DNA of 64,000 nt, taken from the NCBI GenBank assembly GCA_965637545.1, contig OZ281494.1, forward strand, positions 4,650,001-4,714,000, in the 5' to 3' direction. The notes beneath the pieces are model-generated. The model ran no database searches. It was not told the DNA's origin and saw only the letters and a list, made by a program, of their open reading frames with translations. Both the position numbers and the translations under genes were made by a program. Source of the DNA: Phallusia mammillata (Eukaryota). Positions 797-57,404 of the stretch are shown here, piece by piece (position 1 is the stretch's first letter; each line of letters starts with the position of its first letter).

Positions 797-1940
797 CTTG
801 TGTTGTAAAAGCATACAAGACCCTACAAAGTCAGCTCACTATTAAGGTGAAAACAAAAGCAAACTGGTTTAATTTGGAACGGCGTAACTTTGCTTCAACT
901 ATTTAAAACGCGCAAGAAATAACCACGTGGTGACCTACACCCATCATAGGTTAGTGCCGACCATTAACGCATTATCGTAGTCGGCCACGATGTGATTTGT
1001 TTGCAGATATATTGATCCCTCATATTGTCAGGCATAAACTTGTCAAAACTTTTAGAATAGACTATACTTCGTTATTGCATGACTTGGAGCTACTAGCAAA
1101 GCACATACTGATATAAACTTGTTAACTTTAAAAAGCTTGTGTTTTATTACTTATAACTTTCCTTGCTTAGGTAAATAAGATCTCTATGATTTTACCAAAC
1201 TTTGAATCATGTCTGATCGAGTGTCTCTCATTTTCATCGTCGCCCGCATAACATTCACTTGGTCTGTGTCCGACATCTCATTGATGAGAACATCCATTGC
1301 TATGTAGGTGCCCGTCCGACCTGCTCCGGCACTAAAACGAAACACATAGTCAAAAATGGCGTCAGGCAAAACATGTTGACATGAAATTAAGGCCAAATGG
1401 TAAAGCAGATGTCATTATTGAAAACCACTCATATCAAGACTCTTTGCTCATTATATTTCTTAGTGGAAAACACTTCTGCTTATTACACAACGTAAGATAA
1501 AGCAATCAGTAAAAAAAATTCCAGAGGCGATCAAGATTGCGAAAATGGGTTCGTTTACTGTTTAAGAATATAATCATCATCAACACGGCACTACCTGCAG
1601 TGTACAACTATTGGGTTTCCGTCTTTAAGTTCCTCAACCATGTGACGTAGATACATCATGTTTGACGTCACATCTGGGATTCCGTGATCGGGCCAAGATG
1701 TGAAATGCAGTTGGTAGATTGTTCGTTGCATCTAGAGTCAAGAAAATGTTGCAACTATTTTGGATATGGCGGAAGTTGTATCACAATGCACGATTTTCCT
1801 GATATGATGACATCGATTGTGCAACAGTAAGGTTAAAAAACACAGTTTTAAGTTAAAAGCACAGAGGAATTTGAAAAGCATTAGTAGGACCACATAGACA
1901 TACACTTTCCAACCTTTTTTAATAAGTAAGAAGTTTATTG

Positions 1941-1956
1941 ATTCTATTTGAATGAG
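1941..1956 (+). other. Spliced-leader-like 16-mer (15/16 match), antisense to a PTP intron
   Basis: ATTCTATTTGAATGAG versus SL ATTCTATTTGAATAAG. Lies 25 nt into the intron after exon 2110-1982. Not followed by GT. Confidence 0.7.
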
Positions 1957-4900
1957 TAGTAAAATTTACAGGATGACTTACGTTGTGGCAGGATAGCGTC
2001 ATTTTTCTTCTAATAATTCCACTCATATGATACTCATAATGTGTTTCAATACAGAATCCACCAAAGTTTAAAGTTTCAGCACAATCAGGCCAATACTTGG
2101 AACATACTGTCTGCAAATCAAAGACGAAAATCTTTATTGGTCCATATAACACATCAAATTGATATGTCTACAGTATTCCAACACTCATATTTAACTGCAT
2201 TGAAAATGTTGAACTACTATACAAGGTTGCATATATTGCTTGTTAAAGATAAGGGTCAAACAGGTTTGAAAGAAGGACTTTTCGGGTCGATCCGAGTTCG
2301 ATCTTACGTTTGAATGTTGTAAGCTTATTCAGGCCAGACATTCGGCTACATTTGTGTTGTATGTGTACCTCTGACTTTGAGGTATGTTTTTGGCTTTTTG
2401 TAATGGATTTGTACCAAGTTTTTGACCTGTATAAGTGGTTCCATGTCTGTTTAAACAGTAAAACATTTTTGGGTCTCACCTTTCCTGATTCCACTAGGTT
2501 TGTGAGCATAACAACTAATGTTGTGCCGTTTTCCCAAATCATTCTCCAAAAATCTTCCAGTGTTTCAGGCTTGGGTCCTTGTGCGGCGATGAACTTCCGT
2601 TCTTCATAATAACCCTGACGAAATGACAACAATGTTATACATAGTAGTTTACAACACAAACTGTGCCCAATATCGGTAGTGCCTTTTAAGAATCAATTTA
2701 TTTGTTTGATGTCTTGTAATATCGGCAGGGTGTCTGGCAGCTACGGTTCTGATCATACTGCTTTTCGAATCCCGGTCCATTGTTTTTGTTTTTTACAAAT
2801 TGTTCAAATTGAATAAAAAAGTTTTTCTTGACAAAAACATACCACCTAATTTCTTGCAGAAAAAATATTGCAATACCACACATGTTGTTTATAAATTGTT
2901 AAATGATTATTGTAATAGACTAATAAAAAATCATAGTCTTACAGGAATATACGATGCGTTGATGTAACTGGTTTCTTTGTCTCCGCTGAACACGACTCTC
3001 GAATGATCATCTATTTATTAACAGGAAAATCAGGATTGTTCATTTTTCCGCAAAAAAAACCCGCAAAAAATCACATTTTTTCAGCATAAGTCAAACAACA
3101 AAAACATTCAAACCACACGATATTTAGTTGCTTGTCAAACTGCTATTTCTTGTAGCATTTAAAAAAATAACAACGTGCTTTTCAAAATCTAACATATATG
3201 TTAATTTACTCACATGGGAAAACATGGTTGAATCGGTTTTTCTTCGTGTTGCATTGCATCTTTGCTACTTCTCTGGTTCGTGCACTCGACTTGCTAACAC
3301 GACAGATTTCCTGAAGAACAATCTCATAACATTTTAGGATTAGTCAGTAAAACTTTTTGACATTCACCTCACTGGGTTGTACAGCAAAGTCAAAGAAAGC
3401 AGAAGTAAATTTAGTGGTGTCAAATTTTAATCGAATATTTGGTACGCTCAAAAAATGTATCAAATTAGCTAGTGTTGCACATAAGGCAGATATGCTGCAA
3501 GGCATGTTTATAATTTAACAAGATATAAAAATCTTAAAAGGGGCAAAATAGATATTTGCGTTAACTGGGAATACCTCATATTGCAGTTCCCATGTTTTAA
3601 ATCCATCCGATGAGTTATCAATGAAGGATTATAGCAAATGTTTATCTTTGCACGATTGTTTCTCCAAGTTTGCCAAATGATCAGCTACATACAAAAAATG
3701 TAGATTTTCTTTACATACAAACTGACCTTGTTTAACACTAAGTTGGAACTTCTACTTACCAATAAAGCTTTCGCTTTGATATTGTCCCTGGTGTTGATTA
3801 TGATGAGAATTATCTTCAGTAATTTCAATCATGTCATCAACCTGCAAAAATAAAATGAAACTTATTAGCCTTCTCTCATACCTTTTGCCTGCAGGTTTAT
3901 TGTCTTATCCGCTTTGTTCTCATGAGATTTGGGATTCTAATCCGACCTCGGTTACTATTCTTAGAAAAAAGTTAGATTGCTCCAACACACAGTGGAGCCT
4001 GGTGTGATGAAATAAATCAAAGTCACCAACTGCCCAAGTCAAAAAACAACACACAAAAAAAAAAACAATTCAGATTGCAATAAACCTTGCATCTCGAGGA
4101 ATTATTGTTAATTACACTGTGAGACGTTGCTCGCCCATCGAGGTTAAAAAATAAAGTAACATAGAAATTTACACTTACGTTTTCATATGTATTCTCTTCG
4201 TCTTGTACAGTGGTCGTAGTGTGACAGTTTCCTAACATAACATTCCTAACATAGCAAAATTCACAAATTGTATGTTAGATTCTTCGGATATAAAACCATA
4301 AACCTACCATATAAGTGACAGCTGCAACATTTTTGATCATTGTTGGTGTGGTTTTGCCTTTAAACGACAAAATGATTCATAAATCTGTATTTACAGCATC
4401 GTACAATATTTAAAATGTTGCACTACTAAACAGATCATCATGGTTGTAATAAAAATTCCTAGGCTTAATAAAAGAAAAATAAAGGCATATATCTCAGCTA
4501 AAATATGCAGTTGTAATTTTTATTTTATGTAAGCGAAAAATTTAGTACGAACCTTCTAAAGAAGAGCAAAGTCAGGGCGATAACAACGATGAGAATCAAA
4601 ACAACCGCAATCAGAGGACCGGTCAAGTTCCAAGGATTGCTCCGTGTTACTGCAAACAAAAAGTTAGCTCTTTTATGTACGATTGTCATTGTTTCACTTT
4701 GTCAACCAACACTGAAGTAGTATTTTTTTTACCTTGGTTTGTGATAAAACCTGAACAAGCAACAGTTGTCGTTTGTTGCGGAAAAGATGTAAAAGATCCG
4801 TAAGCAAGAACCTGAAATATTTAATGTTGGTAGTAAATATAATCTAGCATTAACGTTACATTTAAAGCTGAAGAACTAAAACATTTCTATCATGTTAACT

Positions 4901-7900
4901 GAGTTAAGAAATGTAAACAAAAATAAATTAACCAAACACTGATTAACGTTGGATAAAACTATTTCAAATTATATTTTGCAAAGAGACTTAATAGACATGC
5001 TAAGCAAAAATAAAGATTGACTTGGACATAGGAGTAGAGATACTTTTATGAACAGAAATATTTACGCGCAAATACATTTGAAAGTTACCGAAAAATGTAC
5101 TGTCGACCCAATTTTGTTTTTATCCATCTGAAACCTGAACGTGTTTTGCCTTTGATTGATGTTGAAGTTTTGAAGAGTTTGGCCCTCTACATTGAGCTGT
5201 AAAAAAACACAAGGTTTATTTTAACAAACCCAAAAAGTTGACAGTTTAAAATTGACGATGCCTTTATAGCAGTGTAGTAAAAACCTGGCGGATATATTGG
5301 TTGCCTGGCAAATAATGGCCTAATCTTTTCATTTCTGTTGTATATTAATGTTGTTTGAGTGTTCTTTGAGCAATAGTGAAGATTTAAAGAATAAATGACT
5401 TGATATTTTTTTAAATATGAATCTGTTAGAATCTAGTATGTGCAAAGCGAGTTTAATCTCCGAACAAAATGTATACACAGTCGGACCTGAATTTTGCAGA
5501 ATCCATTTTTAGACGACACGTCCCCTAACATGGTCAAGACGCAATCAGTCTGTTTGATTTTAATCTTGCCTTCTTTCAAAAGATAAGAAACACGGCTCGA
5601 TTGTTGACCACGTTGTACTGGAACTGGAACTTGAATTGTCTTGGATGCAACGACTTCAGGGCAAGCAATCAAAGTTGCTATTGTCTGTAATAAGTGATTT
5701 GAATAGGGAAAAAATACACAGTCATACGCAGATCAAAATGACCCCTAATATTACCAAGCTTTTGATGAATTAAAAAGTAGTTGGCGTAAACAAAAACAGC
5801 GCTGCCATCATTCAATGGAAAAGAACACACCAATATCTCGTTGAGGTTTTGATTAGATACTTTGAACATTTCTATTTTCTATTTTCCAGAAAACCTTACC
5901 TTGACTCGATGAGACACATTTTTAGGCAAACCGTCGGTAATGATGTAGAACTTGTCATTGTAAGGAAATGACTTTCTAATGTTTGTGTTTAAAACTTCCA
6001 CCTGTGATATTTTCTTAATTTAGAAATCCCTTTTAAGTAAAAGCAATTGAACACATATAACTGATATGATTAAATATAATCGTATCATAGCCTTATTTCT
6101 ACATTTTCAAGTCGTTTGTCAAAGAGAACTTTGTGTTATTGCACTTTCAGCTCTACCAAATCACATTTAAATTAATGTTAAATTTTTTTAAAGTTTAAAT
6201 AACTGATAAATAGGGTAGATAGATTTCGAAAGTGAAGTCTCTGCGATGCAGCGATTTAACGTTGCGGATTTGTGACCGTTAAACATCCCCTGTTTAGTGA
6301 ATCTGTATTTGTTTACACTTGTTAGTGAAACACTGTTCAAATAGACACAATAAAACTTACCCTACATTAGTAAAGGAATGGACAAACTACTAGTTTTACA
6401 ACAGTTTGCACCAAGTTCGTCTTTTTAATCAATCAACAACGTAAATAGACGTTACTAAAGAAAACAACGAAGGTAAATTCCCACCTCAACTATGATTCCG
6501 CGTCCGTTTCTTGAATTTGTCGACTGATGTAAATTTCCGGACCAGGACACAACCAGTCCTTCACAGTTGTATATCGCAGTCGCGTTTACTAAACAGAAGG
6601 AAGTAAAAACAAAATCAAAGCTAGAGTAGCTGAAACAGTTTTGTTATTTAACAAATTGCCATAAACCGCAAGTTTTGTGTGAAAATCAATTTGAGAAATT
6701 AAAAAAAAAAAACGTTTTTACTCCAAACTTACGTGTAAACTGACAAGCGTAAAAAGCTGTTGTGTTGACATCAATGTTGCAGTTTGGCGTCCAACCCTAA
6801 CCGTAGTGTAAAGTAGATGGGGAACATGATGACGTTGATCCCAACCAAATATTAACATCTGTAATGTTTGCAGTAAATGTAACCAACTGTTTTAGGAAAG
6901 AGATTTTTGTACATCGCTATTACGATTCTTATTCCTACTTTTGCAACAGATTTCTGCAAATATTTTTGTACTAAACGGTACAAAGAAAAAAAATTATGAA
7001 GAATTTTGAACCATTTAAACCTACCAAACACATGCAAATCTTTTTTAGACATAATGAACCCGTTGTCTTCTTTTACTGGCCATAACTTTGTGTTCAAAGG
7101 ACTCGGAACAGCATAACGATATAATGTCTTGGTTCCTGGTCCACCTGTACTCGATGCGTACAATTCGAACCTGTTTTTCCAACCTAACAAAGAATTGTAA
7201 GCTGTTAGCTGTTATTGCAAGACATAAAGAATGAACTCAACAACGCTTTATGGCAAATGCATTGCCTACGTTTGCAAGAGAAGCGTTATTGAGTTAAAAT
7301 TGTCTGAACAAGCAATAACACAACTGTAAAACAAACACATTTGCCACACCAATTAGAAGGTAAAACAAGCATTTTGCTACACAGATTAGAAAGTAGTAAA
7401 CGCTTGTTTAGAGCGTATTCGAAACACTAAAGATCCAATAGCATAAAAATAGACAAAATATTGTACATTTTGTTGCTTGTTGAAATATATTCTAGGTATG
7501 CATATTGTTGCATGAATCTTACCTTTGCCTTCGGGGCATGGAATTCTAAGTAGAATCAACCATCTTGAATCAGGTTCGCCAGCTGGATCACAGAAATACA
7601 CTGGTATGCTGTTTGCCGAGGAATTGCTGAAACAAAATCATTTTCCTGATATTTTCAAAATTATATTAACTTATTTACTTTTGTGTTTTGAAAAACATGA
7701 GAATGTTTTCTATTGTGTTATTCAGTCAGTTACTATCTTACTGTTAAACATTTGCTGATGGTTGGCGCGTTACAAACAGTACTGACCTTTTGTGCAAGTG
7801 AAAATAGAAATGTGCACCGTTGTACAAGACAGGTTTCCAAACGCTTGGCTGCGTCATCTTTGTCTTAGAATATTTAAATATGTCACGAGTAGAATATACT

Positions 7901-11967: not shown

Positions 11968-14900
11968 ATGGAGGAAAATAATTGGTCTTCGGAAAATACA
12001 AAAAACAAAAATGGGGACATTAGAGCAGACAATCAACAAGATAAAAAAGATCGTGCAAAGTGGAAGAAATCTTTGGATTTTTTAATTTCGGCGGTTGGTT
12101 TGAACGTAGGACTCGGAAATGTTTGGAGGTTTCCTTATCTGTGCTTCAAAAACGGCGGAGGTAGGAAGATGTGTTGAGTATAGGCCTGCCATACGTCCTC
12201 TTTTTGGAGGACATGTCCTCCTTTTTAACAAAAACCAAGTTGTCCTCCGAGGACAAGAAATAGTACCAAAATGTCCTCCTTTATAAAGAATTTCTGATTT
12301 ACCAAATAAATATGTAACAATTATATATGCCTTTGAAAGAAGCCAAATATACATCTTCAGCTTATTGTTCAGAGAATAAAAGTTTTACATTTTTGAAAAT
12401 ACAAGCTTATTTTAGTAATGTGATGTGATAAATGTTAAACTTTATCCAAGCTAGTGAACACCGTCTAATTTCTGAAGCTTTTATTTTTGGGTTGGCCTTA
12501 AAGTATTTTTTCATGTTCTTTTAACCATGTGTCCTCGTTTTGGGGGTGGAAATATAGTAGACTTAGTTCAGTAGCACGACACAATGAGAGTGTTTGAGCC
12601 TTAAATAACTTGCTTCGGTTCGATTTCGCTGTTTTTGATCACTATATTCCTAATGGTCCTGCTATTACCTACGTTCAAAACGTTTGTTCATTATTTCTCA
12701 TTTCAGGAGCATTCCTTGTTCCTTATCTTCTCTTTACTGTGCTGATTGCGATTCCTGGCAACGTCCTTGATATTTCCTTAGGGCAGAGATTTAGACAGGG
12801 ACTCTTGAAGAGTTGGAATATAACCCCAATAATGAAAGGTAACTCAGATTGCCATGAGTCAGCAAAAAGTTATCTACTGTTTTATAAGTGATGAAGCAGC
12901 AAACATTTATGTATTTTTTGCAGGTATAGCAATTGCCCAAGTAATTTTACTAATAAATTTCTCGATATCCTATCCCATAATATTGGTGTGGGGAGTAAAG
13001 TACATCGTGGCCTCCTTTGCCAAAGAACTGCCTTGGTCCACTTGTCACAACGATTGGAATACTGTGAACTGTGTCACACCGAAAGATGTGAAGTTGAACT
13101 ACACACAGTTGCCTGGCAACCAAACGGCGGGAAATTTTAGCGGGAAAGTGTCTGCGGCCACAGAGTTTTGGAAGTAAGAAACGTAGTAGTGAGAATTATA
13201 AAGTTATTGATATTTTCTTAACAACTTTTTTCGCAACAAAAGATTTTGAACTCATTACATTTGACATTTAGAATAAAATGTATCGTTTTAAGGGAGTATT
13301 TTTTAAAAAGAAGTGTACATATGGATGACAGTGCTGCTGTTTTGTTTACAAGCATATGTTTATCGGAATAGCAAACATTAATACAAAGTCAAAACAATAC
13401 GTAATATTCCTCATACTCACTACAAACTACATTTGAAGACATTTTGAGTTTTAATTAACAATCTTAAATCGTTTCAGCTTCAAATTTAATGTTCACATGG
13501 ACATTTTTTGGGCTGTGACGACATGCACAGAAGTAGTAGTTTCGAAGTGTTTACATGCATCATCGACGTTTCTTTGTTTACATGCATCATCGACGTATTC
13601 AACAATATTTTCTTTGTTTACATCCGATCATCGACGTATTCAAAATTATTGAATTAATTAAAACAACATGCCATACCACAACTAAGTGCTTTAGTTTACA
13701 AACGATCTTACGTATTTCCAGCCTTAAAGTTCTTCAGAAATCCGCCGGTATCGAACAAATAGGAGATTTGGTTCCCGATCTGAGTGCTTATCTTCTTGTT
13801 ATATGGATCGGACTTTACTTGTGCATCTTTAAAGGAATTAACTGGTCAGCCAAGGTAAAATTCAAAAACAATTTTTCATTTGCATTCAAATTTATTAAAC
13901 CACAGTTACACGTAAATTTGTTTTACATCATAATTCAGATTGCCTACGTCACAGCTACACTTCCTTATGTTTTTATTGTCGTCATCCTTATACGTGGTCT
14001 GCTGCTTGAGGGCGCTAGTGAGGGAATTAAATACTTTTTAATCCCTGACTTGAACAAGTTGTTGGATCCTGGGGTAAGTGTAAAGGCAGCGAATTGCCCA
14101 AAAAATCATTGATCTGTTTACCGTTTTCGTTGCAACTGTAACAAAATACAATTTAGTTTTATCAGTAACATAAGTCTATTTTTCTTTGTGATTTTGTGGT
14201 AATAAACTATTTATTCCAGTAGAAGAAACTGTTGGATGTGATAATGTAGAAATGTGGTATGTCAAAGCTTTTGTGTTTTTTCAGTGTGGTCAAGTTGTTA
14301 AACACTGTTTTAAATGGATAAAAGTTAGGTGATTTGTTCAAATGGGTTACTTTGTCGTAAACCTTTACCAAGTTTGCATCAGCCACAGTGTATCAGCGTT
14401 CATTTATATAAGTTGATCTAAAATTGTGAAGCAGCCATGAGTTCGAATCATGCCGCAAATTATTTTTTACAATCTAATTCTTTGCTAAAAGGAAATGGTA
14501 AAAAGGCAAAATCCTGATTTAGCACCAGTCCAAAATAAAGCCAAGATGTAACTAAAGTTTTCTTGGTGTCTTTTCTTCCCAGAAAATAGTTGATCATTTG
14601 ATTCGATGTTTTGACAGGTTTGGGTCAGTGCTGGATCCCAGGTTTTATTCACAAACGCTCTGGCCTCGGGAGCACTTACATCACTTAGCACGTTTAACGA
14701 CTATCACCACAACCTGTGGAGGTACGTCTGTACTTGTGGTGGTTATGTAAAAATTAAAATTTTTGTTCCCTTTGTTAAGTCATTTAAAATATTTGGTCGT
14801 TTTGTAATAACCCCGCATGTTGTGCAAGCAATCGTGGCCTTTGTGTTACTGGTAAATACAATAAACAATCTTCTTATAAAGCAGGGTTTAAACAACAAAT

Positions 14901-16862
14901 GTTTAATTTTTTAAACAAATGTTTTTCAATATTTGTTTTTCGTTTTACACAGAGATGCTTTTTATATTGTGGCAGCAAACCTTATCGCAAGTTTCACTGC
15001 CGGGTTTGCTGTTTTCTCTGCTTTGGGTTTCATGGCAAACTACCAGGTAAGAAATGAATCCTCGAAATTGAGTAGTAGCTGTGTTAAGTTTTTGAGTTGT
15101 AACTTAAATGAGTCAAGTTATGCTCACTGTTGTTTTTACACACAAGCTTTTTGTACATTTGTAAAGTTACATTTTTTTACCAAGTTTGTAATTTTGTTTT
15201 GCTGTAGATTGTTGTATTAAAGCTCGCCATTACGTTCACAGAACAAAACCTTAGATGAAGTCGCCTCTTCCGGTCCGGGCTTGGCCTTCATAGTTTACCC
15301 CGAAATCCTTTCACTTCTACCAGCTCCACAACTCTGGTCCGTTCTATTCTTTCTCATGATTCTGTTCCTTGGATACGACACACAGGTCGGAAGAAAATGA
15401 CTTGAAACGTATGATTATATAACTTCCAATGCTGTTAAATAAGCTGGCAATCTCCCAACAAAAATCGAAATGTGCTACATATTGTGATCTAATTTTGCTG
15501 GGCCTTACCTTAAAGCCTAAAAAGTCAAATAGTTGAGCGCCAGCCCCGGATAACCCCCTGTCGTGGGTTCGAATCCCATCGCTGGCTAAGTGTTTTCACC
15601 CTATTCTGCATGGAGGTGCTTTGAGACCAGCTCGATTTGCTAATGCGTCCCTTTGTTAAATATTCTTGTCAGTTTGAACATTTTTTGCAACACAATTCAT
15701 ACCAGATGAATAGTAAGCTCTTAACTTTTGGTGTGTTCAGTTTGTTTGCTTGGAAGCAGTTATAACGGCAATCATGGACAACTGCCGGATGTTAAGACAC
15801 TATAAATATGGCAGGAGCATAACACTAGCGATTCTGTTTGCTGTTTTCATGTTACTCGGTCTTTCCATGGTCACACAGGTTTGTGTTTCTATAACTTTTT
15901 AGTCATGGTAGAAAAACATTGAAAATCAAATCAAACCAAATTCAGTTGATTTGCTTTGTTACTTTGTCATTCATAACTGTTAAACGGTTTTTATAGCAGC
16001 AAGGACACCCAAAAAACATGACTTAATTATCAAGTCAACTAATAATGTAAATTCGCACCTTGGGGTTTTCTTTTCAAACTCTGGTAAAAGCTGCTTAAAA
16101 TTAAACTAAGAAAAACTTAACCAAAGCACTTCAGCAAAGTGTCCAAAAGGCGACAATTTAAAGCTGGTATGTTTACTCAGGGAGGTGTTTACATCTTTGA
16201 ACTGCATAGCTCTTACGGTGTCGCGGGTTGGTGTTGGCTTGTGATGGTTATGTGTCAGTGTGTGGCCGCCTCGTGGTTCTACGGATTCGACAGATACTGG
16301 GAGGATTTGGTAAAGATGATTGGCGAAAAGAGAGGAAAGATGTGGATCAAAATATCATGGAAGTTCATCTCACCTATAACTTGCGGGGTTCAGTTTTGTA
16401 ATTGTTATGCATGTGTGTGATATGCTAAAGATGTGTATTTTACAAACAGACGATGGCAATCTACTTAATGGCGAACATCAAACGTCCGACATATGATGAC
16501 TATACTTACCCTGTATGGGCTGAATGTATTGGACATCTCACAAGTCTAAGTTCAATTGCGTTTATACCTGGTTATGCAATCTACAAACTTGTGAAAACTT
16601 GGCGAAGCGGTGAAAACATTAAACAGGTATGCATAAATAGATTTGTGGAGCAAATCTAGTTTTGTTGAATAGAATACAGGTTTAAACATAAAAATAAAGA
16701 ATCCTTTCGTCTAACAAACATCATTTGCTAGCTGCAGCTCCATTGTTCATAATAATATTTTTTGTTTGTTTTTAGTTGCTGGCTGCGCAGAAGATTGACG
16801 CCGATCCAACATCCGGGTTACCTACTACGTCTACACACGAAAACTTGGAAACGCTGCTTTGA
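11968..16862 (+). CDS. SLC6 (neurotransmitter:sodium symporter family) transporter, ~597 aa, substrate unassigned
   Basis: 12 exons, all GT-AG with consistent phases: 11968-12160, 12707-12838, 12924-13173, 13722-13854, 13939-14073, 14618-14721, 14953-15046, 15242-15385, 15741-15878, 16181-16387, 16450-16626, 16776-16862. Motifs [58 protein letters not shown]. Ends ETLL-stop. Confidence 0.95.
12181..12565. mobile_element. Older hAT-type MITE in SLC6 intron 1
   Basis: Left end TAGGCCTGCCATAC; degenerate right end AATATAGTAGACTTA. Flanks GTTGAGTA and GTTCAGTA form an 8-bp TSD with one mismatch. Repeated TGTCCTC(C) subterminal motifs. Confidence 0.7.
13549..13641. repeat. Three imperfect tandem copies of GTTTACATGCATCATCGACGT
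   Basis: Copies start at about 13549, 13576 and 13616 in SLC6 intron 3. Confidence 0.8.
15515..15650 (+). mobile_element. Diverged copy of the 9585-9748 tRNA-derived SINE
   Basis: GAGCGCCAGCCCCGGATAACCCCCTGTCGTGGGTTCGAATCCCATCGCTGGCT aligns to the 9748-9676 head, and the following tail is also similar. Located in SLC6 intron 8. Confidence 0.75.
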
Positions 16863-19166: not shown

Positions 19167-22100
19167 ATGGATAACATGTTTATAGTCTTAATCCTTTTAT
19201 TTATTCCCCAACTTATGGGTCAAGGTAAGACCGGTAATATTTTTGTTTTGTTTTCGGGGTGCATAAAAAAGGTATTTCATGTTAAAAGGTATATAACGGC
19301 ATTAACAGAAAATATTTGCGTTATATGCACAAACATTTTTTTACAAATGGGATTTCTAAAACAATATAAACAACAACGCTTTTGTTTAAGTTTTGGAATG
19401 TAGCCAACCAACCAAAGTTCATTTAATTAAACCTTTATGATTTTCAGAGTGCTCAAGATACATTAGTTCCAATGAAAGGGTGATCGTTCTTTCAAATGAC
19501 CAGAAGAACGTAAAATCCGCGCAAGCATCTTGTAAAGTGAAAGGGGGACAACTTGCTTTGTTAGATTCTCAACCTAGCATTGATCAAGTTTCATCGATTG
19601 CAACTAAACTCTTTACTAAAGGTAAAATGGTGTTTAACTCAAATTGGCAAATTGTTTGTATTAGATGTAACGCCCGTTTTATGGACATAAAATTGACCAT
19701 TTGACCAGGCACTGACCATCATGAAGCCATAGTAAAGCTAAGACAAAGGGTGCGAAATGCAAAAGTTTACAAACATGCAACTTGCATCAGCTTAGAACAA
19801 TTCCTGATTTGTCTAAAAGTCTTCATTAACAAATGCAAAGAATCGTTTAGAATGTACATTAGTTTTTGTTCTATTTGTCGAATAGGGCAATCGCGTTGTA
19901 TCTATAGGTTCCACTTCCGCCTCAATTGCATTGGTTCACAACTTTGCCCCTGTCTTTTGATGAACACTTTTAACTCAATCTATCAAAAAATACACACGAA
20001 TTAATCTGACTGTTACGCATCAACTTTGCAATCACATACGACTGATTACTTTTTTCAGATTTGCAAATTGTGTGGATGTACCAACAAAATTCTAATCGTT
20101 TTAAATACTCCAGGATAAAGATAACTAAGGGGAGTTGGAAACCTGCCATTTATAATGGTTTACATTTTTATTTTCATTTGTATAAAAGGTTAGTACTTTC
20201 ATCGGTGACAAATACCGCAGAACTCTAATAAAAAAGTATTGACATAACATTTATTTTAACAAAACTTTTTCCATCCTGAGAGTAATTTAAGTACTTGAAA
20301 CATTACCCTCTACAGTTTCTCAAACAACAGAATACCAGTATATTTCTGTGTTCCTGCCGGATCTGATTCAAGATACTTGGTACAACCAAGAAATACATGC
20401 GAAGGCAACGGTTAGTGTTACTTTTCACAGCTGTGCGCATGCATTACAAAATTTCCTTTAATTTCCACCAGCATTGTGCGTTTGACACATATCTTTAAAC
20501 TTATGCATTTGATATTATGATTGCTGTTATTGTTTGTAGGTTGGAAAACCAAATTTAAATTGTATGCATCAAATACGAGTGGACCAGTAACTAAGACGTT
20601 GTATAGTTATAAAGTTTCCCAACCTTTCAACACAAAGTTATGGCCAGTAAAAGAAGACAATGGTTTCGAATTGGCGAAGAGCAAAAACAATTTGTATGTG
20701 TTAGGTAGGTAACTCTGGTCGGACAAAATATGTCGGAATCAATATGTTAGGCAGTTCTTAAACCAATCAAAACTTTTTTCTCAGTAGGACTAAATGTGTA
20801 TATGTGTTGCGTTTGGTATGTAGCAGTCACAAATAAAAAGGTACAATTTAAATTATAAAATAGCCGCTAACCCCAGAAAATAAATTTTTGTTTAGTTATA
20901 TTTTTTACTGCACGTTACAGATGTTAATATTTGGTTGGGATCAACATCATCATGTTCCCCATCTACTTTACACTACGGTGAGAGTTGGACGCCAAACTGC
21001 AACATTGATGTCAACACAACAGCTTTCTACGCTTGTCAGTTTACACGTGAGTTCTCAGTAAAAGATTGTTTTCATTTTCACTGTTTTTATAGAACTGATT
21101 GCTATTCTTGCTATTTCAAGTGTTACTGAACAAAAAAATATTTCTAAAAACGTTTGGCGTTATTACAGTTTTATTAGAGTTATTATAGAATGTTTGAAAA
21201 ACACAAAAAATAATAAATCACTTGAAACTTAGAAGTAGTGCTGATCCATTGGCTGTAATCTTAAATGAATGCGTTTTTTAAGTTGCGACTGCAAATAAAA
21301 TAAAACATAACAGCAAAGTTAAATTTGTTGTTATTTCTTATTTAGTAAACGCGACTGCGATATACAACTGTGAAGGACTGGTTGTGTACTGGTCTGGAAA
21401 TTTACATCAATTAACCAATTCAAGAAACGGAAGAGGGATCATAGTTGAGGTTACAAATTGTTTTTGTTTTTTTATAATCCAACTCTGAAATTCTGAAGTC
21501 CAACTTTTTGTAACCTTTTAAAGCGTTAAACTGTTGTGAGATCAGTAAATATGTTTGTTTTTTATGGATGTAACTTTTACTTAGACAGTGTTTGTTTTTT
21601 TACCAACAAATGCACTACAAAAACTGAACTACTAAAACAGGGTACCTTTAGGTGCTTCAAATGCACAAAGTTAATATGCTAAACGTGCGTGTATGTTACT
21701 ATTGCTTACGTAATATGTTTCAAAAACAACTGTTAACGTTAAAATATGACAGGTTGAAGTTCTAAACACAAACATCAAAAAGTCTTTTCCTTACAATGAC
21801 AAGTCTCATATCATCCCCGACGGTTTGCCCAAGAATGTGGTTCATCAAGTTAAGGTAAGGTTTTCTAGGACAAGTACAATTCTAAAATAATAATGTTCAG
21901 GGCAACTAAGTATTAACTTAAAAGTATTTACTATTCAGAAGTTTTAGTTTTGTCGAGCCGCTTTAGACAAACTTACAATTAAAGAAGCTTAACTTTCCAC
22001 CTTGTAGTGCTAAAACACTATTTTTAATGTTTTGTCATTACCCTGATGGGCAACTACTTGACAATTCGACTGGCAAAATATTAGAAGGATTTTAATATAA

Positions 22101-25100
22101 GGGGTTATATAAGGGTTCATATTTTAAACATGTCAAAACCTTATGGCAGGTAACAGCAAAGTTGACTGCTTGCCCCAAAGTTGTCGCATCCAAGACCATT
22201 CAAGTTCCAGTATCACGTGGTCAACAATCGAGCCGTGTTTCTTATCTTTTGAAAGAAAGCTGGATTAACATCACAAAAAGTGATTGCGTCTTGACTGTTG
22301 TTGGTGATGTCTCATCTAAAAATGGATTCTGCAAAATTCAGGTTAAACTGAATTTCATTCGTTAATGTATTTTTTCATGTGTGTTGTATGTATGTGTTCA
22401 AAAGTTTTACGTTTATTGCAGCTAAATGTTGAAGATCAAGCTGTTCAAACTTTTAACATCAATCAGAGACAAAACTTATTCAGGTTTCAGACGGATCAAA
22501 GCAAAATTGGTTCGACTCTGAATTTTTCAGTAAGCTTCTTGTCATCATTATCTTGCTGTGTTGTTTATACACAATTTTTACAGGTCTATTTTACCATTAA
22601 CGGTGCCGTTTGCACATTCCAGTAGGGATTATGTGTTTTGATTTTCATATCTTAGTTTTTTTTTTTAAATATGTTATTTGGACGCATAATTGTATTCTAC
22701 GGTATTGTAACCACAGCAGATTGATGTGAAAGTGTTTTTAACAAACACACTGACAATTTCAGGTTCTTGCTTACGGAACTTTTACATCTTTTCCGCAACA
22801 AACGGCAACTGTCGCTTGCTCAGGTTTTACAACAAACCAAGGTGATAGATGTTTTCAAGTTGAATACTTTTCACTAAATTGATAAAATAAATTCATTATT
22901 ATTATGAGAATGACCCATACTAAGCTAGCTTTTGTTTTATTAAACATTTTTGTGCGTAAGTTTTTTGATATGACACGTGTGGTACACCAAGCAATAATGC
23001 TTATCTTTGATATTTTATCTTTATAGGCATATAAACGACTTTTTATTCGCAGTAACACGGAGTAACTCTGGCAGTTTGGCTGGAGCTCTGGTAGCAGTTG
23101 TTTTAATTCTGGTCGTTGTTATTGCTCTGGCTGTGTTCTATTACAGAAAGTTAGTTTTTTGCTAATCTTTTTCAAATTTTCAGAGATGTAAAAAATTAAT
23201 CATATTTACCTAAAACCTAATTATCCGCAACACATATACTCATACACTCAAAAGTAAATAGTTTAAAATTTGTAATTTTCTTTTTTATATAAAGGCGCAG
23301 GCGCAAGAACAAACTCCCAACACTTTCAATTTATCGTCCAAATGGTGAGTATGTGGGCTTTGTAAGAAAATTAACATTTTGAATTGTATGTTTATTTGTT
23401 TTTTATTTTTTAGGAAACAATCGAGCATCTTCGATTTTTCGCCACGAAGAAAACCCAAACGAAAACGTAAGTGAAACATATTAGCCAAGGTCACAACACC
23501 ATTAATTGAAAAGAGAAAAAAGAAATTGTGTTTTTTGTAGGTGATAAACATTATTGAAATCCCCCCTGTTACTATTCAACCCCAGCAACAGCCAGAAACT
23601 GAAACATTCAATGGTAACTAGCGTTATAAATTACCTTTCCGACTTTTTGTCCAAAACGTTTACACAATAATAACAAAAAATAATAAGAGAAACTATTAAT
23701 AATTTTCTGGTTTGCAGCCATATCATTTTTATGTTTTGTAGCCATTGTGTCCACAAACTGGGATGACAAATCGATCAAAGACAAACATTTGCTGCAAGCT
23801 TACATCGATAATTCAGTGGATGGATTTAAAGCATGGAAACTTCAATACGAAGTAAATACATTTATTTGTTTGTACTTTCCTCCGTCGGACAAAGCAGAAA
23901 AGAAAGAATTTAACTAAGAATTCCGGAACAAACTTCACTTCAAATCATTTACGTTACTCTATAGTCTCTGCAGAGATGCATGTTTTCTCAAAACTAGTTA
24001 CTATTGTTGAACATACTCAAAATGCTTTAGAAATGTAAAAACCAGGCAGTTTCATTTTTGAACAAAATTACATCAAAGCACTAAACAAAATAATTGTGCC
24101 CCAGTCATGCACTCACCTTAAACATAATTACCACGAAGAGCATCATGGAGCAGCTTTTAAAATATCATTTTAGGTCACTTTTGACTTTTCACTTTAAAGC
24201 TAAAGTTTCTGCCTGCTTTTTTTACTGTATTTCTATTTTGCTTTATTGTACTTTCAGGAAATATGTCGAGTGAGCAAGGCAAGTAACAGAACCAATAACG
24301 TGGCGAAGAAGCCATCCAACAAAAAAAGAAACCGCTACAAAGACATTTACCCTTGTAAGTTGGTTTTTGTTTGCATATTCCATTCAAACAAGTCAAACAG
24401 GAAATAACTTTAACTCTAAGAATCGGCCAAAATTAAATAAGATACAGAGTATGCTTATTATTTAGGTGAAATATACACATCTCAAAAAACGTCGAATATC
24501 TTTTTTTGGAACTAATGTGTGTTGTTTAACCAAAATCAATCGTAGTATCTGACTATAAATATATTCGGGTTTGCCAATCTATGGCAAAGTGTTAACATAT
24601 TTTTCCATATTTACATATAGACGACAACGCGAGGGTCGTTCTAAGCGGAGACGAAGAACATGATTACATCAACGCATCCTATATACCTGTAAGGTTACGT
24701 TTAACTTATTATTAATCTATTAATTGTCTAACAACCTTATACTTTACCATTTCACGTTTCAAGAAATTTTTTATTACGCCGGTTGTGTTTGCAAATGCTG
24801 TTAGCCAATCAAACAAAAATTTTGCAAAGCAACGTGTTTTTTTAATTTGAAAAAACATAAAGGTGTTTAAATGGAAAATCTAAAGACAATTTTATAAAAA
24901 GTTTAAGCACTTTATATCTTAAAGCAGTGCCTTTTGGTGTCATATTTTGGGCACTGCAATTACAACGTCGTCGCTCTTTTGTCAGGGTTATTATGGAGAA
25001 CGGAAGTTCATCGCCGCACAAGGACCCAAGTCTGAAACACTTGAAGATTTTTGGAGGATGATTTGGGAAAACGGCACAACATTAGTTGTTATGCTTACAA

Positions 25101-28100
25101 ACCTAATGGAGTCAGGAAAGGTAAAAATGGGAAATGAATTTACTGTTTGAATGGACCGTTGTTCCACGCCCAAATTGGGGGCAAAACAGCAGGCAGTTAA
25201 AAATGTTAAAATTAAAAAGTCATTGTGGAAAATTTTGCGGTCCCGAGTCATGGGCCAAAAAGTCCTAAACATTCTTGCATGTTTGTTTACTTTGAAGCAC
25301 CCATGATATTAAAATCTTATTGCTTTAGTTCTGGCCGACTCTCGACTATTAATATCTTTTCCTGTGGGAGTGTGATGTTACGGGTTTTGTTACATTGGAT
25401 ACCAAATAGCGATTGGATTCAGAAATTGCCAGCCTAAGTAACTGGATCTAAAACGTAAATTCTACATGACGTACTAACTTGCAGCATTTGAAAATTTCAA
25501 TATCTTCTCTGAAGGCAAGAATGTTTCACTCCAATACAGCCATACTTTTTTGAGATGTTTAACCAAACACGCTGCATAATAAGCTTCTGGCCAGACTATA
25601 TACCCTTTATGTGTAGGCAAAGCTCCTCATATCTTTTAGTCTGGTTTATACCAGGGTATTAAATTTTGTTTAATGTGATTCGAACATAGGATACCCACGA
25701 GAACTAGCCTTATTTATTTTATTATGATTTTAAATAAATCAGGCACTTCGGAACATGAGGCCAATTTATTTACCCACGTCAATAGTTGTGAGAAAAAAAC
25801 TGTTTCATTTTTTAGAATAAATGCGCGAAGTACTGGCCAGATTGCGCTGAAAGGTCAAACTTTGGTGACTTTGATGTTGAAACACGCCAAGAATATTACA
25901 TCGGTGGAATTATTAGAAGGGAAATGACTCTCTCGTGTGACAAGGTAAGTCGAATGTACACTAATTCTTATTCAAATAGAATCAATAAACAAGTGACAAA
26001 AATAGTTAGCTCAAACCGCAAGCAAACTTAAACTCAATACAACATAATACTGTCATGAGCTAAACAGAATTAGTTACAACTCATGTGTAAACCGTTTCGG
26101 CAAACAAAAATACATTGAAATGCAACTAAACTCTAATAAATATAACACGATTTCTCTCGCCATATTTGGCTGTTAGTTATTTGTTAACGGATGTGTCTTT
26201 GGGATCACCTTTAACCAAGCCAACTATACAAACACAAACAGTATATCTTCGGAAAATCTATCCACTTTGCGCCAAGACTTGTCGGCTATATTTACATTTT
26301 CGATGACGTCATACTGGGAAAAGCTTGTGACATGAATTACTTCCGTCATACGCGATGGAAGATAGCTAGTTTGATTTCTAAAACAAACTTAGAAACAAAC
26401 TTTCCAGACGCAAGGGACTGTCTTTGAAGGCAATGTGTCTAAGTAAAACAGTAGACATTGATATGAAACTAATATAAAAAGTTAATGAAGTGGCATATTG
26501 TCAAACAAGGAACAAGACATAATAACTGGAATATGAAAATACATTTTAACAAGAAGAATTCGTAAACTTCTAAACTCTTTTAAAGCTGATAAACAATAAA
26601 GACGTTTTACATCTTTACAAGAGCAAAATATTGTCACGTAGCTAATGAGGCATCATTAGCTAGTGACGCATTTAAAACACTTGCAAAATGACAGAAACAA
26701 TTTGGTCATGACTTCCTCTTAATTCCAGATGCACCGAACAATTCATCAACTACATTTCAAATCGTGGCCTGATCATGGCATTCCAGAAGTGACGTCAAAC
26801 ATGATGTATCTACGTCACATGGTTGAGGAACTAAAAGACGGAAACCCGATTGTTGTACACTGCAGGTCAGAGGCGTTTGTGTTGATTACGTTCTTTACAT
26901 TAAACTCAAACAATTTACCTTTAAAAGCTTATTTAGGAAATATACTGGCCAAAATAACCGTAAAAACAACACGCTTTGTTTATCAAACGTAGCAGAAAAC
27001 GTTCATGCCATTATTTCTAACTTTTCTCATGTAATATTTAAAGGAAAATTTCATGAACAACAGCTGGATTTCATACTTTCATGCTTTACAATTATGTCAC
27101 ACTCAGTCCATTTAAGGCCAAAATTTGCTAAACATGTCGAAATCGGCAATGAATTTGGACTTCATTGTATCATGACATGTTTTTACAGTTGCGATATTTC
27201 AAACTGTGTGTATTGTTTCAGTGCCGGAGCAGGTCGCACGGGCACCTACATTGCAATGGATGTTCTCATCAATGAGATGTCGGACACAAATCAAGTGAAT
27301 GTTATGCGAGCGACGATGAAAATGAGGGAAAATCGATCAGACATGATTCAAACTTTGGTAAGATTCTTTAGTATAAATTTTAACTGGACAATACAGATCT
27401 TTATTAAATAAAAAATTTTAGAATTATCAGCGTAACTTATTTTATTTCTTACAATTTTTATCAAAAAAGTTTTGTGATTGCGTGCGTCATTCCGATAGAA
27501 AAATCACAATCTGACCAATAGGGAGCAATGTTGTAAATGTCGACGATGGCCTTTAACTCACATAATCCTCCTTTACCTAGAAACAATACGTGTTTGTCCA
27601 TCGTCTCCTCGTTGAACATTATTACACACCAAACACCGACAGAAGTTTGGTCGAATTCCAGCAATATGAAAAGAAAAAATGGTAAGCACATTTGTTGCTT
27701 TGTTTTCGTAAGGTTCAAATTTGTGACGCTTTCTGTCGAAAAATTTTTTTTGGTTTTATGTTGGTCAAATGCTTAAAAAACATTCAAAAAGTGTTTTCTC
27801 CGCGGGAATCGAACCCTCGGTGCTCAATTGTATCACTTTTTGCTCGATTTTTATTGACTTTGAGCTTTGTACTTTAGACCGTTTGAGACATTTTTGTCCC
27901 CAAAGGAAGGGACACAAGCTCTACATTTTGTTTAATATTTTTATAAACATTTTGCGCTTATTTGAAAAGGAACTTTAATTAGGCCCAAATTTTGCTTCAT
28001 CGATATAAAATAAAAATTGTTTTCCTCATATTTTGTTCTGTTTCAGGGCAAGCACTATTAGGGATGAGTTTGTCCGACTTGAACTTCTTCAGTTAATCCA

Positions 28101-30620
28101 TAGACCTTCTCCTGATTTCAATCTTCAGGATATAGGCAAGTAGCAACACTAAGTAACTACCTCAAATGCCTTTTGGCACCTTTGTTTGTCAGGAGACAAA
28201 AGATCTGTTTTCATTGGTTATTTGCATTTTTTGTAGTATTGGCTTGTTGTATCCCATGTATTTGCAAATAATCACTATGTAAATTTGTGCTCACAGGTCA
28301 AGACCCAAGTCATGTTACTGTGGTTAATCCCACCACAAACGAAGAAGTTGGGGTTAATTCACACTACATTGAGGTAAAAAAGAAGCAAAGTTTGTTAATT
28401 ATAGTCGTTTCAAAGTACAGATTCCTCATAGCTCTTACTTATGCACAGTAATAAAATATGGACCATAGTCAAACTATTTTAACGAGGCTGCATCAATTAT
28501 TTTATCATAAAAATAAATAAAACATTTTCCAGGATCGAAGTTTTTCTCGTGTCTTTATCGCAAGTCAAGGACCTGATTACGACCCCGAACTTTTCTGGAC
28601 AATGGTAATCCAGTGCAACGCTCTTACTGTCTTCGAACTTGAAGAACCAGTGAGTTACTCTTTTTTATTTTATTTTTACCGTTTCCCTGATCTCATAAAA
28701 TTTCGTGGGACGGTTCTTTAGAACCGGTGCCAACCGGCTGAATCCCACCAATAATGCTGACATAACAACAATATTTTCAAGTCAAGTTCATCGTTTTTGT
28801 TTTTAAAACTTTTCGATTAGGTTGAACTTGTATCGTTTATCACCATAAGTTACAAAAGCATATAACCATTGTATGATAAAGCAGCTGCTGAGAGTGCTTA
28901 CTGTTTCGAATATAAGGTATCGTCAGTGCAGCTGTTGGCGAGACATTGGTCGTATAGGCTAGTTACGGCAGTGCAGTTTGTTGGAAGTAACAGGGTGTAA
29001 AGTCATAACAAACATGTTCAACTGTAATTATTTTTTCAGAGTAAAGTTAAAAAAGTTTCGTCACTATTCGAAAACGACCGCGTCATGTTTGGTGACGTAA
29101 GCATTGACGTCATGTCGATTCATTATCGCGAGGGATACACACTTCAGGAGCTTTATATTCAACTCGCAAGCGGATTGGCTGTAAGTAACAAATTCTATTT
29201 GACTGTGGCTAATAGCTAATTCTGAACGTTTTTCTCGCTGTAACCTTACATTTCACCCCAATTTTTTGACACAAAGGCACAAATAATTTTTTTCTTGCAT
29301 TTGTCGCATGTTTAGTTTTTTAGATTTCTTAGAGTTGTTTTTACTCCTAATTGAGCCCAACTGTTATAGAACATTCTTGTTTACCCATATGTTAGTTAAT
29401 GTGTGTTCACGTCTGTTAATGCATGATGAGTAAAAATATTGACTACGTTCACTTTCTTGCTCAATAAAAAAATTATATGCATGTTCCTTAAAGCCCTGTT
29501 TACGGATTTCGTACAACACAACACTTTATACCATTCACCGTACAACACAACACTTTATACCATTCACCTATAGAGATGCCGAATGGACAAATGCGTTAAG
29601 GTTTCCAAGTGTTTATGACGTTTGTGACTACTTGTGTGACCAAGTTCTTGTTGCTTAATTAAAAATTTTCTGACTTATATAGCGTGTTATATCATAACAT
29701 GACGTAACACCCTTTTTGTAAGTTACGGCGTCAAAATAAATATCCACGTGTTGGTTTAATTTGCAGCAACCTGTCATCGTCACCCATATTTGCGGGTTAA
29801 ACTGGAAAGAAGATCAGAATCCTCCCCAGCCTGCCACTTTACTTGATGCCATTGATTCCATTGACATCTTTATGCCAGAAAACCCACCAAGAAGACCGAA
29901 ATTACTGGTCCATTGCAGGTACAAGTTTGTAAATCAATGTTAACAACTATGTTCCATTTGAAAGTGTGTCGAAGGGGTTTTGTTTGCAAAACCTATCCTA
30001 CAAAGTCTTTACCTAAGTGATTACAAACCGATTGATATTAACACATAACTTACACACCGTTGTTAAATTAATTGGAGTTGGGTTGAGTTGATTGTTTTGA
30101 GAATATAACTGTTGTAGTCAATTTATCTGTTTTAATGCATTTTATTGCGCACAAACGATAAACTTGGATTATAATTATTTTAACAAGCCGTGTACGTAGG
30201 AACGGTTGCACTCGTTCTGGAATGTTGATTGTTCTCATCAATTGCATCGAGCGTCTTAGATCCCAGGAGCGCATCGATATTTTTCGGGCAGTTGAAGATC
30301 TACGCAGCCTGAAATCAAACATGGTCAACAGCCAGGTATTTAATATTATTGTGATATTAAAGGAGCCAAATGGAACATTAATGAAATGTGTAAACAGTTT
30401 TGGTTTATTTTCTCATCATTGTTTTTCAATCAACTTTCAACTTTTCAAAAGAATGTGCGAAAATAGAAATGTTAACACAAATTTTCATTCATCTATTTTA
30501 AAGTATGGGGCTTGCACTGACACTTTTTCAAAACTTTTTCAGATTATGTACAAGTACATTTACGACGTGATGAGGTTCTACGCATCAATTTTCAACAGCA
30601 CCTACGCCAACTTGAGTTAA
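19167..30620 (+). CDS. Receptor-type protein tyrosine phosphatase, ~1102 aa: signal peptide, C-type-lectin-like domain with insert, two FN3-like domains, TM, active D1, degenerate D2
   Basis: 30 phase-consistent exons: 19167-19224, 19448-19621, 20059-20188, 20316-20410, 20540-20704, 20921-21046, 21346-21449, 21753-21854, 22150-22341, 22422-22529, 22763-22841, 23053-23149 ([25 protein letters not shown]), 23295-23344, 23414-23466, 23541-23613, 23742-23851, 24258-24354 ([11 protein letters not shown]), 24621-24688 (DYINAS), 24986-25120 ([14 protein letters not shown]), 25816-25944 (KYWP), 26729-26865 (WPDHG), 27222-27357 ([11 protein letters not shown]), 27581-27681, 28047-28135, 28297-28373, 28533-28649, 29040-29180, 29767-29918, 30200-30335 (D2 [11 protein letters not shown]), 30543-30620. 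Total 3309 nt, one open frame. Confidence 0.92.
25967..25982 (-). other. Perfect (16/16) spliced-leader sequence, antisense to PTP intron 20
   Basis: Plus strand CTTATTCAAATAGAAT is the reverse complement of ATTCTATTTGAATAAG. Lies 22 nt after the exon-20 donor. Not followed by GT on its own strand. Confidence 0.75.
28674..28752. mobile_element. Terminal fragment of the 617-796 MITE family, opposite orientation
   Basis: TGATCTCATAAAATTTCGTGGGACGGTTCTTAGAACCGGTGCCAACCGGCTGAATCCCA closely matches the reverse complement of about 620-700. Confidence 0.8.
29510..29567. repeat. Exact 29-bp tandem duplication
   Basis: CGTACAACACAACACTTTATACCATTCAC twice, intronic. Confidence 0.9.
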
Positions 30621-57358: not shown

Positions 57359-57404
57359 TACGGAGCGGGGAGCAAATCTGAGTAAAACCTTATTCAAATA
57401 GAAT
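57359..57404 (-). ncRNA. Spliced-leader (SL) RNA gene candidate; 3' end approximate
   Basis: Exact Ciona-type SL exon ATTCTATTTGAATAAG (57404-57389), immediately followed by a GT donor. Nt 6-15 pair with nt 20-29 (9 of 10 pairs), placing the G|GU junction in the loop. Sm-like AGAUUUG follows. A CpG-rich promoter-like region lies upstream. Confidence 0.8.

What the first reader, a model, noticed from the sequence alone, without database searches (positions are those of the whole stretch)
25945..25990. SL-complementary element kept at the same intron position in both phosphatase paralogs
Seen in sequence: 22 nt after the exon-20 donor, the pre-mRNA contains CTTATTCAAATAGAAT, the exact reverse complement of the 16-nt spliced leader, followed by CAATAAAC. 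The minus-strand paralog has CTCATTCAAATAGAAT-CAATAAAC 25 nt after the same donor (plus-strand 1933-1956). This 24-bp block differs at one base, while the flanking intron is clearly more diverged. Neither copy is followed by GT, so neither is an SL gene. Inference, three alternatives: (a) an intronic site that base-pairs with SL RNA or SL-capped mRNA beside a 5' splice site, which would be an undescribed kind of splicing regulation; (b) the fossil of a trans-spliced antisense RNA written back into the genome; (c) an intronic polyadenylation or intron-retention isoform. For (c), the block contains AATAAA and reads in frame as (Y/H)SNRINK in both copies, since the 3-nt spacer difference preserves frame. 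It would truncate the receptor before the WPD loop and catalytic Cys.
Basis: partly seen in the sequence, partly recalled or inferred. Interest (0 to 1): 0.8.

Follow-up and report, generated by a model that had tools for sequence, protein, structure and literature searches.

The report
Backwards spliced-leader copy conserved in intron
A backwards copy of the sea squirt's 16-base spliced leader, followed directly by a poly(A) signal, is the only intron sequence still shared by two old copies of a receptor phosphatase gene, so it is probably functional, but what it does could not be tested here.

Summary
Window 25967-25982 (+) is the exact reverse complement of ATTCTATTTGAATAAG, followed by CAATAAAC. 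It lies 22 nt after the donor of a phosphatase-domain exon. The inverted paralog carries the same 24-mer with one change at 1933-1956, 25 nt after the homologous donor.

The 24-mer is the only intron stretch the two genes still share. All other intron flanks look like shuffled sequence (best 24-nt window 16-19, null maximum 20, block 23/24). It is not a leader RNA gene, and it has no body, poly(A) tail or target-site duplication of a retrocopy.

New here: paralog B has two in-frame nonsense codons. The conserved extension is essentially just AATAAA. The backwards leader reads as branch point, pyrimidine tract and AG.

My best reading (about 0.35): an old leader-derived fragment kept as an RNA-processing signal, a premature poly(A) site or decoy acceptor, beside the donor. 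Pairing with the leader is physically possible (-17 and -13 kcal/mol) but has no specific support (about 0.12).

The scan has met lone backwards leader copies in introns of this genome before, none reported as conserved.

The parts
25967..25982 (+). Copy A: exact reverse complement of the 16-nt spliced leader. On the pre-mRNA it reads as a pyrimidine tract plus AAATAG, with the AG at 25978-25979.
   Evidence: leader sequence from PMC1488885 and PMC7986045
25983..25990 (+). Copy A: conserved extension CAATAAAC, with AATAAA at 25984-25989. TAA at 25986-25988 is in frame if a phase-0 donor were joined to the AG at 25979.
25945..25966 (+). Copy A: 22-nt spacer starting with the consensus donor GTAAGT. 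It contains the branch-point-like CACTAAT. It is not conserved with B beyond the first 7 nt and ACTA.
25816..25944 (+).
   Evidence: Y_phosphatase profile positions 82-123
26729..26865 (+). Copy A: next exon, with the WPD loop and VHC. It begins with ATG directly after the acceptor.
   Evidence: profile positions 132-176
1933..1956 (-). Copy B: the same 24-mer with one transition (CTCATT for CTTATT), 25 nt after the homologous donor at 1981.
1982..2110 (-). Copy B: the homologous exon, 74-76% identical to A at the nucleotide level.
1595..1731 (-). Copy B: the next exon (WPD loop), which also begins with ATG.
6797..6799 (-). Copy B: in-frame TAG where A has GAG (A 20980-20982).
3629..3631 (-). 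Copy B: in-frame TAA where A has CAA (A 23795-23797).

Best explanation
Before the receptor phosphatase gene was duplicated head to head, a short piece of DNA copied from the spliced leader came to lie backwards about 20 nt inside this intron. It has since been kept by purifying selection as part of a 24-nt RNA-level signal in the pre-mRNA.

Read on the sense strand, the signal has four parts: a branch-point-like ACTAAT or TACTAC, a pyrimidine tract, AAATAG, and then AAUCAAUAAAC. That is a 3'-splice-site look-alike fused to a stop codon and AAUAAA.

I infer that it acts as a premature cleavage and polyadenylation site, or as a decoy acceptor, next to the donor. Either would divert some transcripts away from the full-length, catalytically complete phosphatase. 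On this reading the identity to the leader records where the sequence came from, not what it does.

Shown: the sequence, its leader identity, its unique conservation, and its position in the gene. Inferred: the retro-derived origin, the selection, and the processing function.
For: Unique conservation: 23 of 24 matches, against a null maximum of 20 in 840 shuffles and 19 or fewer in all other homologous intron flanks.

Exons are colinear, so the position is homologous.

The conserved part beyond the leader complement is C+AATAAA+C, essentially the poly(A) hexamer alone.

The only substitution is pyrimidine to pyrimidine inside the pyrimidine tract. It costs 4 kcal/mol of leader pairing but leaves the splice-site look-alike intact.

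ACTA just upstream is kept in both copies.

The leader is demonstrably written into DNA in this genome: there is a leader gene in the window, and earlier scan notes report leader-headed retrocopies (leads only).

No conserved intramolecular helix and no Rfam family competes as an explanation.
Against: Both donors are strong (AAG|GTAAGT and AAC|GTAAGT). From general knowledge of U1 telescripting, a strong donor should suppress a poly(A) site 40 nt downstream.

Copy A lacks a GU- or U-rich downstream element, though B has one.

The AG lies 35 and 38 nt from the donor, probably too close for cis-splicing.

Conservation rests on only two sequences, and one of them (B) now carries two nonsense codons.

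No retrocopy hallmarks support the proposed origin.
Confidence: 0.35

Rival explanations
1. Leader-pairing element. The intronic 16-mer base-pairs with free leader RNA, or with the leader on trans-spliced mRNAs, beside the 5' splice site. It would then modulate use of that donor. Alternatively it would tether the leader particle so that it is trans-spliced to the next acceptor, whose exon begins with AUG in both copies.
For: Perfect 16-bp complement in A and 15 of 16 in B. Predicted duplexes are -17.0 and -13.0 kcal/mol, the strongest leader-binding sites in about 10 kb of each pre-mRNA (background mean -2.9, sd 1.7). The downstream exon starts with ATG directly after the acceptor in both copies. 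The block is under constraint.
Against: The conserved CAATAAAC cannot pair with a leader whose first base is the capped 5' end. The only substitution creates an A-C mismatch. A product starting at the downstream exon would be half a phosphatase domain. The papers library holds no precedent. Identity to the leader follows from origin plus any kind of constraint, so it is not specific evidence for pairing.
Confidence: 0.12
2. A functionless relic, which includes the reader's b. On this view a leader-bearing fragment was captured before the duplication. It survives in both copies by luck, by a local mutational cold spot, or by a very short gene-conversion patch.
For: Earlier scan notes report lone backwards leader copies in other introns of this genome that were judged relics (not tested here). 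Exon identity between the paralogs is mosaic, 70-97%, with four-fold-site differences of 2/18 and 2/20 in some exons and 5/6 and 6/9 in others. That suggests ongoing exchange between the copies. B is now a broken gene.
Against: All other intron sequence is at the random level, while this block scores 23 of 24. The adjacent exon is among the most diverged at 74-76%, so a conversion tract would have to be about 24 nt long and would have to spare that exon. Independent insertion of the same 24-mer at the same position is very unlikely.
Confidence: 0.2
3. Function at the DNA level or on the opposite strand. The 24 bp would be a transcription-factor site or intronic enhancer (CAATAAA resembles posterior Hox/Cdx sites, from memory). 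Alternatively it marks the start of an antisense RNA that carries a genomically encoded leader.
For: Perfect nucleotide-level conservation with no synonymous-type variation fits a DNA or RNA signal rather than a peptide. A function of this kind could persist in B even though its coding frame is broken.
Against: No promoter-like or motif evidence was obtained. No ORF or conserved fold exists on the minus strand: the fold z-score is -2.1 in A only and -0.1 in B. The motif resemblance is from memory and untested.
Confidence: 0.13

Closest known systems
Antisense Alu exonization: retro-derived sequence supplying a pyrimidine tract and AG inside introns (general knowledge)
   Same: A retro-copied host RNA sequence, inserted backwards in an intron, happens to read as a 3'-splice-site-like signal and can be co-opted.
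   Different: The source here is the 16-nt spliced leader, not a SINE. The AG lies only 35-38 nt from the upstream donor. No exonized transcript has been shown.
Decoy 3' acceptor of the caspase-2 In100 intronic element (general knowledge, not checked in the papers library)
   Same: A branch point, pyrimidine tract and AG lie downstream of an alternative exon's donor. There the element engages the splicing machinery non-productively and shifts isoform choice.
   Different: In100 lies further into its intron and is not leader-derived. No binding or isoform data exist for this block.
Premature intronic polyadenylation held in check by U1 snRNP (telescripting; general knowledge)
   Same: AAUAAA sits just inside an intron, downstream of a 5' splice site. 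Using it would truncate the receptor before its catalytic half.
   Different: Such cryptic sites are usually not conserved as sharp islands. Copy A lacks a clear downstream element. No 3' ends were observed.
Leader-headed retrocopies and lone leader relics noted elsewhere in this genome by this scan (s1-375379, s1-375378, s1-375406)
   Same: The same 16-mer is written into DNA, sometimes backwards in an intron.
   Different: Those copies head a recognisable element body or were judged species-specific relics. This one has no body, carries 8 conserved extra bases, and is retained in two paralogs whose introns are otherwise randomised.
Engineered pre-trans-splicing molecules (SMaRT) that use an antisense binding domain to an intron (general knowledge)
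   Same: If the pairing reading is right, complementarity between an intron and a trans-splicing donor RNA would guide the reaction.
   Different: There the binding domain lies outside the exon that is donated. Here the donated exon itself would be the paired part. No natural case is known to me.

Membership tests
Spliced-leader RNA gene | Leader exon immediately followed by a GT donor | tested here: not met
   On the minus strand the leader is followed by AATTAG in A and TAGTAA in B. The true gene-type copy at 57389-57404 has GT.
Spliced-leader RNA gene | Sm-binding motif downstream of the donor (AGCUUUGG in Ciona, PMC7986045) | tested here: not met
   The 22-25 nt after the leader run straight into the antisense of the phosphatase exon. 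No such motif is present.
Retrocopy of a trans-spliced RNA | Leader at the 5' end, followed by a body that matches an expressed RNA or element | tested here: not met
   Only 22-25 nt separate the leader from the exon. That stretch is not conserved between A and B and matches nothing else in the window.
Retrocopy of a trans-spliced RNA | 3' poly(A) tail and target-site duplication | tested here: not met
   No A-run or T-run and no flanking direct repeat is seen around either copy.
Intronic polyadenylation site | AAUAAA hexamer | tested here: met
   AATAAA is present in both copies, at 25984-25989 in A. It forms almost all of the conserved extension.
Intronic polyadenylation site | U- or GU-rich downstream element within about 40 nt | tested here: inconclusive
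   B has TTCTTACTTATT followed by GGTTGGAAAGTGTATGTCTATGTGG. A has an A/C-rich stretch with no GU run.
Intronic polyadenylation site | RNA 3' ends with untemplated A at the site | not testable with these tools
Decoy or pseudo 3' splice site | Branch-point consensus, pyrimidine tract and YAG in the right order and spacing | tested here: met
   A reads CACTAAT-TCTTATTC-AAATAG. B reads TACTAC-TCATTC-AAATAG (by eye; no position weight matrix was built).
Decoy or pseudo 3' splice site | Non-productive U2/U2AF engagement that changes isoform choice | not testable with these tools
   This needs binding or minigene experiments.
Intramolecular helix (editing-site complementary sequence or exon-looping stem) | A partner sequence in the same pre-mRNA that is kept in both paralogs | tested here: not met
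   The best partners differ between A (start of the upstream intron, -11.8 kcal/mol) and B (inside the exon, -14.0 kcal/mol). Fold z-scores on the sense strand are 0.8 to 1.7.
Conserved non-coding element under purifying selection | Identity far above the neutral background of the same alignment | tested here: met
   23 of 24 matches, against a null maximum of 20 in 840 shuffles. All other flanks are at the null level.
Conserved non-coding element under purifying selection | Retention in orthologs of other species | not testable with these tools
   No ascidian genome is in the searchable collections. Protein routes gave nothing. The metagenome scan gave two chance bacterial hits.

The most novel reading that the evidence does not exclude
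The intron keeps a full-length complement of the spliced leader because it pairs with leader RNA (or with the leader on mRNAs) next to a 5' splice site. That would be a natural, sequence-guided control of cis- versus trans-splicing. It might direct internal trans-splicing to the next exon, which opens with AUG in both paralogs.
Probability: 0.12. Interest if true: 0.85.

Novelty: new variant of a known kind. Interest (0 to 1): 0.45.

Why it matters
If the block is functional, it would be a case of a host's own spliced leader being copied back into DNA and then recruited as an intronic control signal. That source of regulatory sequence exists only in trans-splicing organisms, and I found no paper in the library that describes it.

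It also gives a concrete, small target for asking whether leader RNA ever recognises pre-mRNAs by base pairing: 24 nt, two natural variants, and one gene pair.

If it turns out to be a lucky relic, it is only one more of the many leader copies scattered through this genome.

Tried and rejected

Orthologous introns, all blank:
- Word searches with the exon plus read-through ORF of A, of B, and with the next-exon ORF found no candidates.
- The one large HMMER search, with the 43-aa exon, returned 0 hits at E <= 0.001.
- Exact-product look-ups of two window ORFs were blank.

Full-length relatives were therefore out of reach of the length-limited search.

A metagenome scan for the 22-mer gave two hits inside what look like unrelated bacterial coding regions, which I take as chance matches in a very large collection.

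Structure: sense-strand folds are no better than shuffles. A minus-strand hairpin exists in A only. No conserved partner exists within the pre-mRNA, and the upstream-intron pairing seen in A is not kept in B.

Rfam gave nothing at gathering score near the block, and only E > 1 noise with lax thresholds.

Rejected readings:
- Alternative donor after the block: in frame in A (48 nt), but B has no GT there and hits a stop.
- Micro-exon: no donor in B.
- Conserved peptide tail: only SNRINK is shared, without any synonymous change, and the stop in A lies 39 nt past the hexamer.

Full report
**What is there.** In copy A the exon 25816-25944 ([10 protein letters not shown]...LSCDK, phase 0) ends at a consensus donor, AAG|GTAAGT. 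After a 22-nt spacer comes CTTATTCAAATAGAAT (25967-25982), then CAATAAAC (25983-25990). On the minus strand, copy B has the homologous exon 2110-1982, the donor at 1981, a 25-nt spacer, and CTCATTCAAATAGAAT-CAATAAAC at 1956-1933.

The 16-mer is the reverse complement of ATTCTATTTGAATAAG, the spliced leader published for Ciona intestinalis (PMC1488885 Table 1; PMC7986045). From base composition about 0.0003 exact copies are expected per window. The window has two exact copies and one with a single mismatch.

The third copy (57389-57404, minus strand) is followed by GT and sits behind a GC-richer, CRE-like island. It is a leader-RNA-type gene, so this species does use this leader. An earlier scan note calls the genome 'Phallusia-like'. 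I could not identify the species. The intron part of the in-window leader gene lacks the Ciona Sm motif AGCTTTGG within the 25 nt after its donor.

**Gene context.** The two genes are head-to-head inverted duplicates. They align exon by exon, A 19443-28158 against B 8281-7. Four consecutive exons map colinearly to the Pfam tyrosine phosphatase profile at positions 38-81, 82-123, 132-176 and 178-221.

Copy A shows no defect in the exons I examined. Copy B has two in-frame nonsense codons. One is TAG at 6799-6797, where A has GAG. The other is TAA at 3631-3629, where A has CAA. B's phosphatase exons are otherwise open and 83% identical to A in protein. I read B as a recently inactivated gene or a null allele.

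**Is the conservation more than chance?** Yes.
- Across 19 colinear intron pairs, the longest shared exact run is 21 nt here. It is 13 or less elsewhere, which is what shuffles give.
- In alignments of every exon pair with 100-nt flanks, this is the only intronic window with at least 22 of 24 matches.
- In the phosphatase half, the best 24-nt window of the other 13 homologous intron flanks scores 3-19 (most 16-19). Non-homologous flank pairs reach 18, and 840 shuffled pairs reach at most 20. The block scores 23.

So the introns are at the random level, and the 24-mer is a sharp island next to one of the most diverged exons (74-76% identical).

One caveat: exon divergence is mosaic. Differences at four-fold degenerate sites are 2/18 and 2/20 in two exons, but 5/6, 4/8 and 6/9 in others. 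One ectodomain exon is about 97% identical. Some exchange between the copies probably occurs. A conversion patch of about 24 nt that spares the adjacent exon is nevertheless hard to credit.

**What it is not.**
- It is not a leader RNA gene. There is no GT and no Sm motif.
- It is not a recognisable retrocopy. Only 22-25 unconserved nt separate the leader from the exon, and there is no tail or target-site duplication.
- It has no Rfam match.
- It has no stable or conserved fold on the sense strand, and no partner within the pre-mRNA that both copies keep.

First, the conserved extension is C+AATAAA+C, essentially the poly(A) hexamer. It cannot pair with a leader whose first base is the capped 5' end.

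Second, on the sense strand the backwards leader reads as a 3'-splice-site look-alike. A has CACTAAT (branch-point-like), TCTTATTC and AAATAG. B has TACTAC, TCATTC and AAATAG. The single difference between the copies is a pyrimidine-to-pyrimidine change within that tract. It costs 4 kcal/mol of leader pairing (-17.0 to -13.0) but leaves the look-alike intact.

Third, after the AG the sequence is AAT CAA TAA. Joined to a phase-0 donor, this gives Asn-Gln-stop, with the stop inside AATAAA.

Set against this:
- The AG is only 35-38 nt from the donor, probably too close for cis-splicing.
- Both donors are strong. By general knowledge of U1 telescripting, that would suppress a poly(A) site 40 nt downstream.
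- Copy A lacks a GU-rich downstream element, though B has one.
- In A the read-through stop lies 39 nt past the hexamer, so a read-through mRNA could even lack a stop codon. A selected peptide tail is therefore unlikely. The six shared codons (SNRINK) also show no synonymous change, which points to a nucleotide-level signal.

**Most likely account (about 0.35).** A leader-derived fragment was captured backwards in the ancestral intron before the duplication. It was then kept as an RNA-processing signal beside the donor, acting as a premature poly(A) site or decoy acceptor that diverts some transcripts from the full-length enzyme. The origin and the function are inferred. Only the sequence, its leader identity, its position and its exceptional conservation are shown.

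**Rivals.**
- Leader pairing, about 0.12. It is physically plausible, and it is the strongest leader-binding site in each pre-mRNA. Both downstream exons begin with ATG. Nothing observed is specific to pairing, however.
- A functionless survivor, about 0.2.
- A DNA-level or opposite-strand role, about 0.13.

**Limits.**
- No orthologous intron could be reached.
That is why the length-limited protein search could not reach full-length relatives.
- The papers library never prints the reverse-complement 16-mer. It gave no paper on leader-complementary intron elements.
- This scan has met lone backwards leader copies in introns of this genome before, and many leader-headed retrocopies. None was reported as conserved between paralogs.

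**Verdict.** This is a real, statistically exceptional, leader-derived intronic island of unknown function.

Noticed in passing
window 6797-6799 and 3629-3631 (minus strand): Paralog B carries two in-frame nonsense codons, TAG for GAG and TAA for CAA, in otherwise well-kept exons. It is probably a recently dead gene or a null allele.
   Followed up: yes
window 20905-21063 vs 6877-6716; 24984-25120 vs 2616-2480; 27222-27358 vs 1331-1195: Exon identity between the paralogs is strongly mosaic. Some exons are 93-97% identical with almost no four-fold-site changes, others are 70-76%, and all introns are randomised. This looks like homogenisation confined to exons (gene conversion limited to conserved segments, or templated by cDNA).
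   Followed up: partly
window 57340-57404 (minus strand): A leader-RNA-type gene: the exact leader plus GT, behind an island with repeated TGACGTCA. Its intron part lacks the Ciona Sm motif AGCTTTGG within the 25 nt after the donor, so the species or the gene variant differs from the published 46-nt Ciona leader RNA.
   Followed up: partly
window 9674-9749 (minus strand) and 15525-15603 (plus strand): A tRNA-Ser(GGA) gene lies upstream of paralog B. A decayed mirror copy (77-84% identical, not called as a tRNA) lies upstream of A. The inverted duplication therefore included the tRNA gene.
   Followed up: partly
window 28678-28747 and 623-692: A 70-nt element, 90% identical between the two genes, lies at non-homologous positions: downstream of the last aligned exon in A, and inside an intron in B. 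It is probably a small dispersed repeat. It is not a tRNA or an Rfam family.
   Followed up: partly
window 13555-14112 (plus strand): An open frame between the two inverted paralogs matches the sodium:neurotransmitter symporter family (Pfam SNF, E = 4e-21). It is an exon of a transporter gene or a fragment of one.
   Followed up: partly
window 25139-25155: In copy A only, the start of the upstream intron holds ATTTACTGTTTGAATGG. This is loosely leader-like in the sense orientation and can pair with the block (-11.8 kcal/mol). B has TTTAAAC there and the pairing is lost, so I treat it as chance.
   Followed up: yes
window 39928-40254 and 40549-40862: Short tandem and near-tandem direct repeats: units of about 220 nt and 157 nt, 91-96% identical. 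They lie in a GC-richer stretch and were not examined.
   Followed up: no
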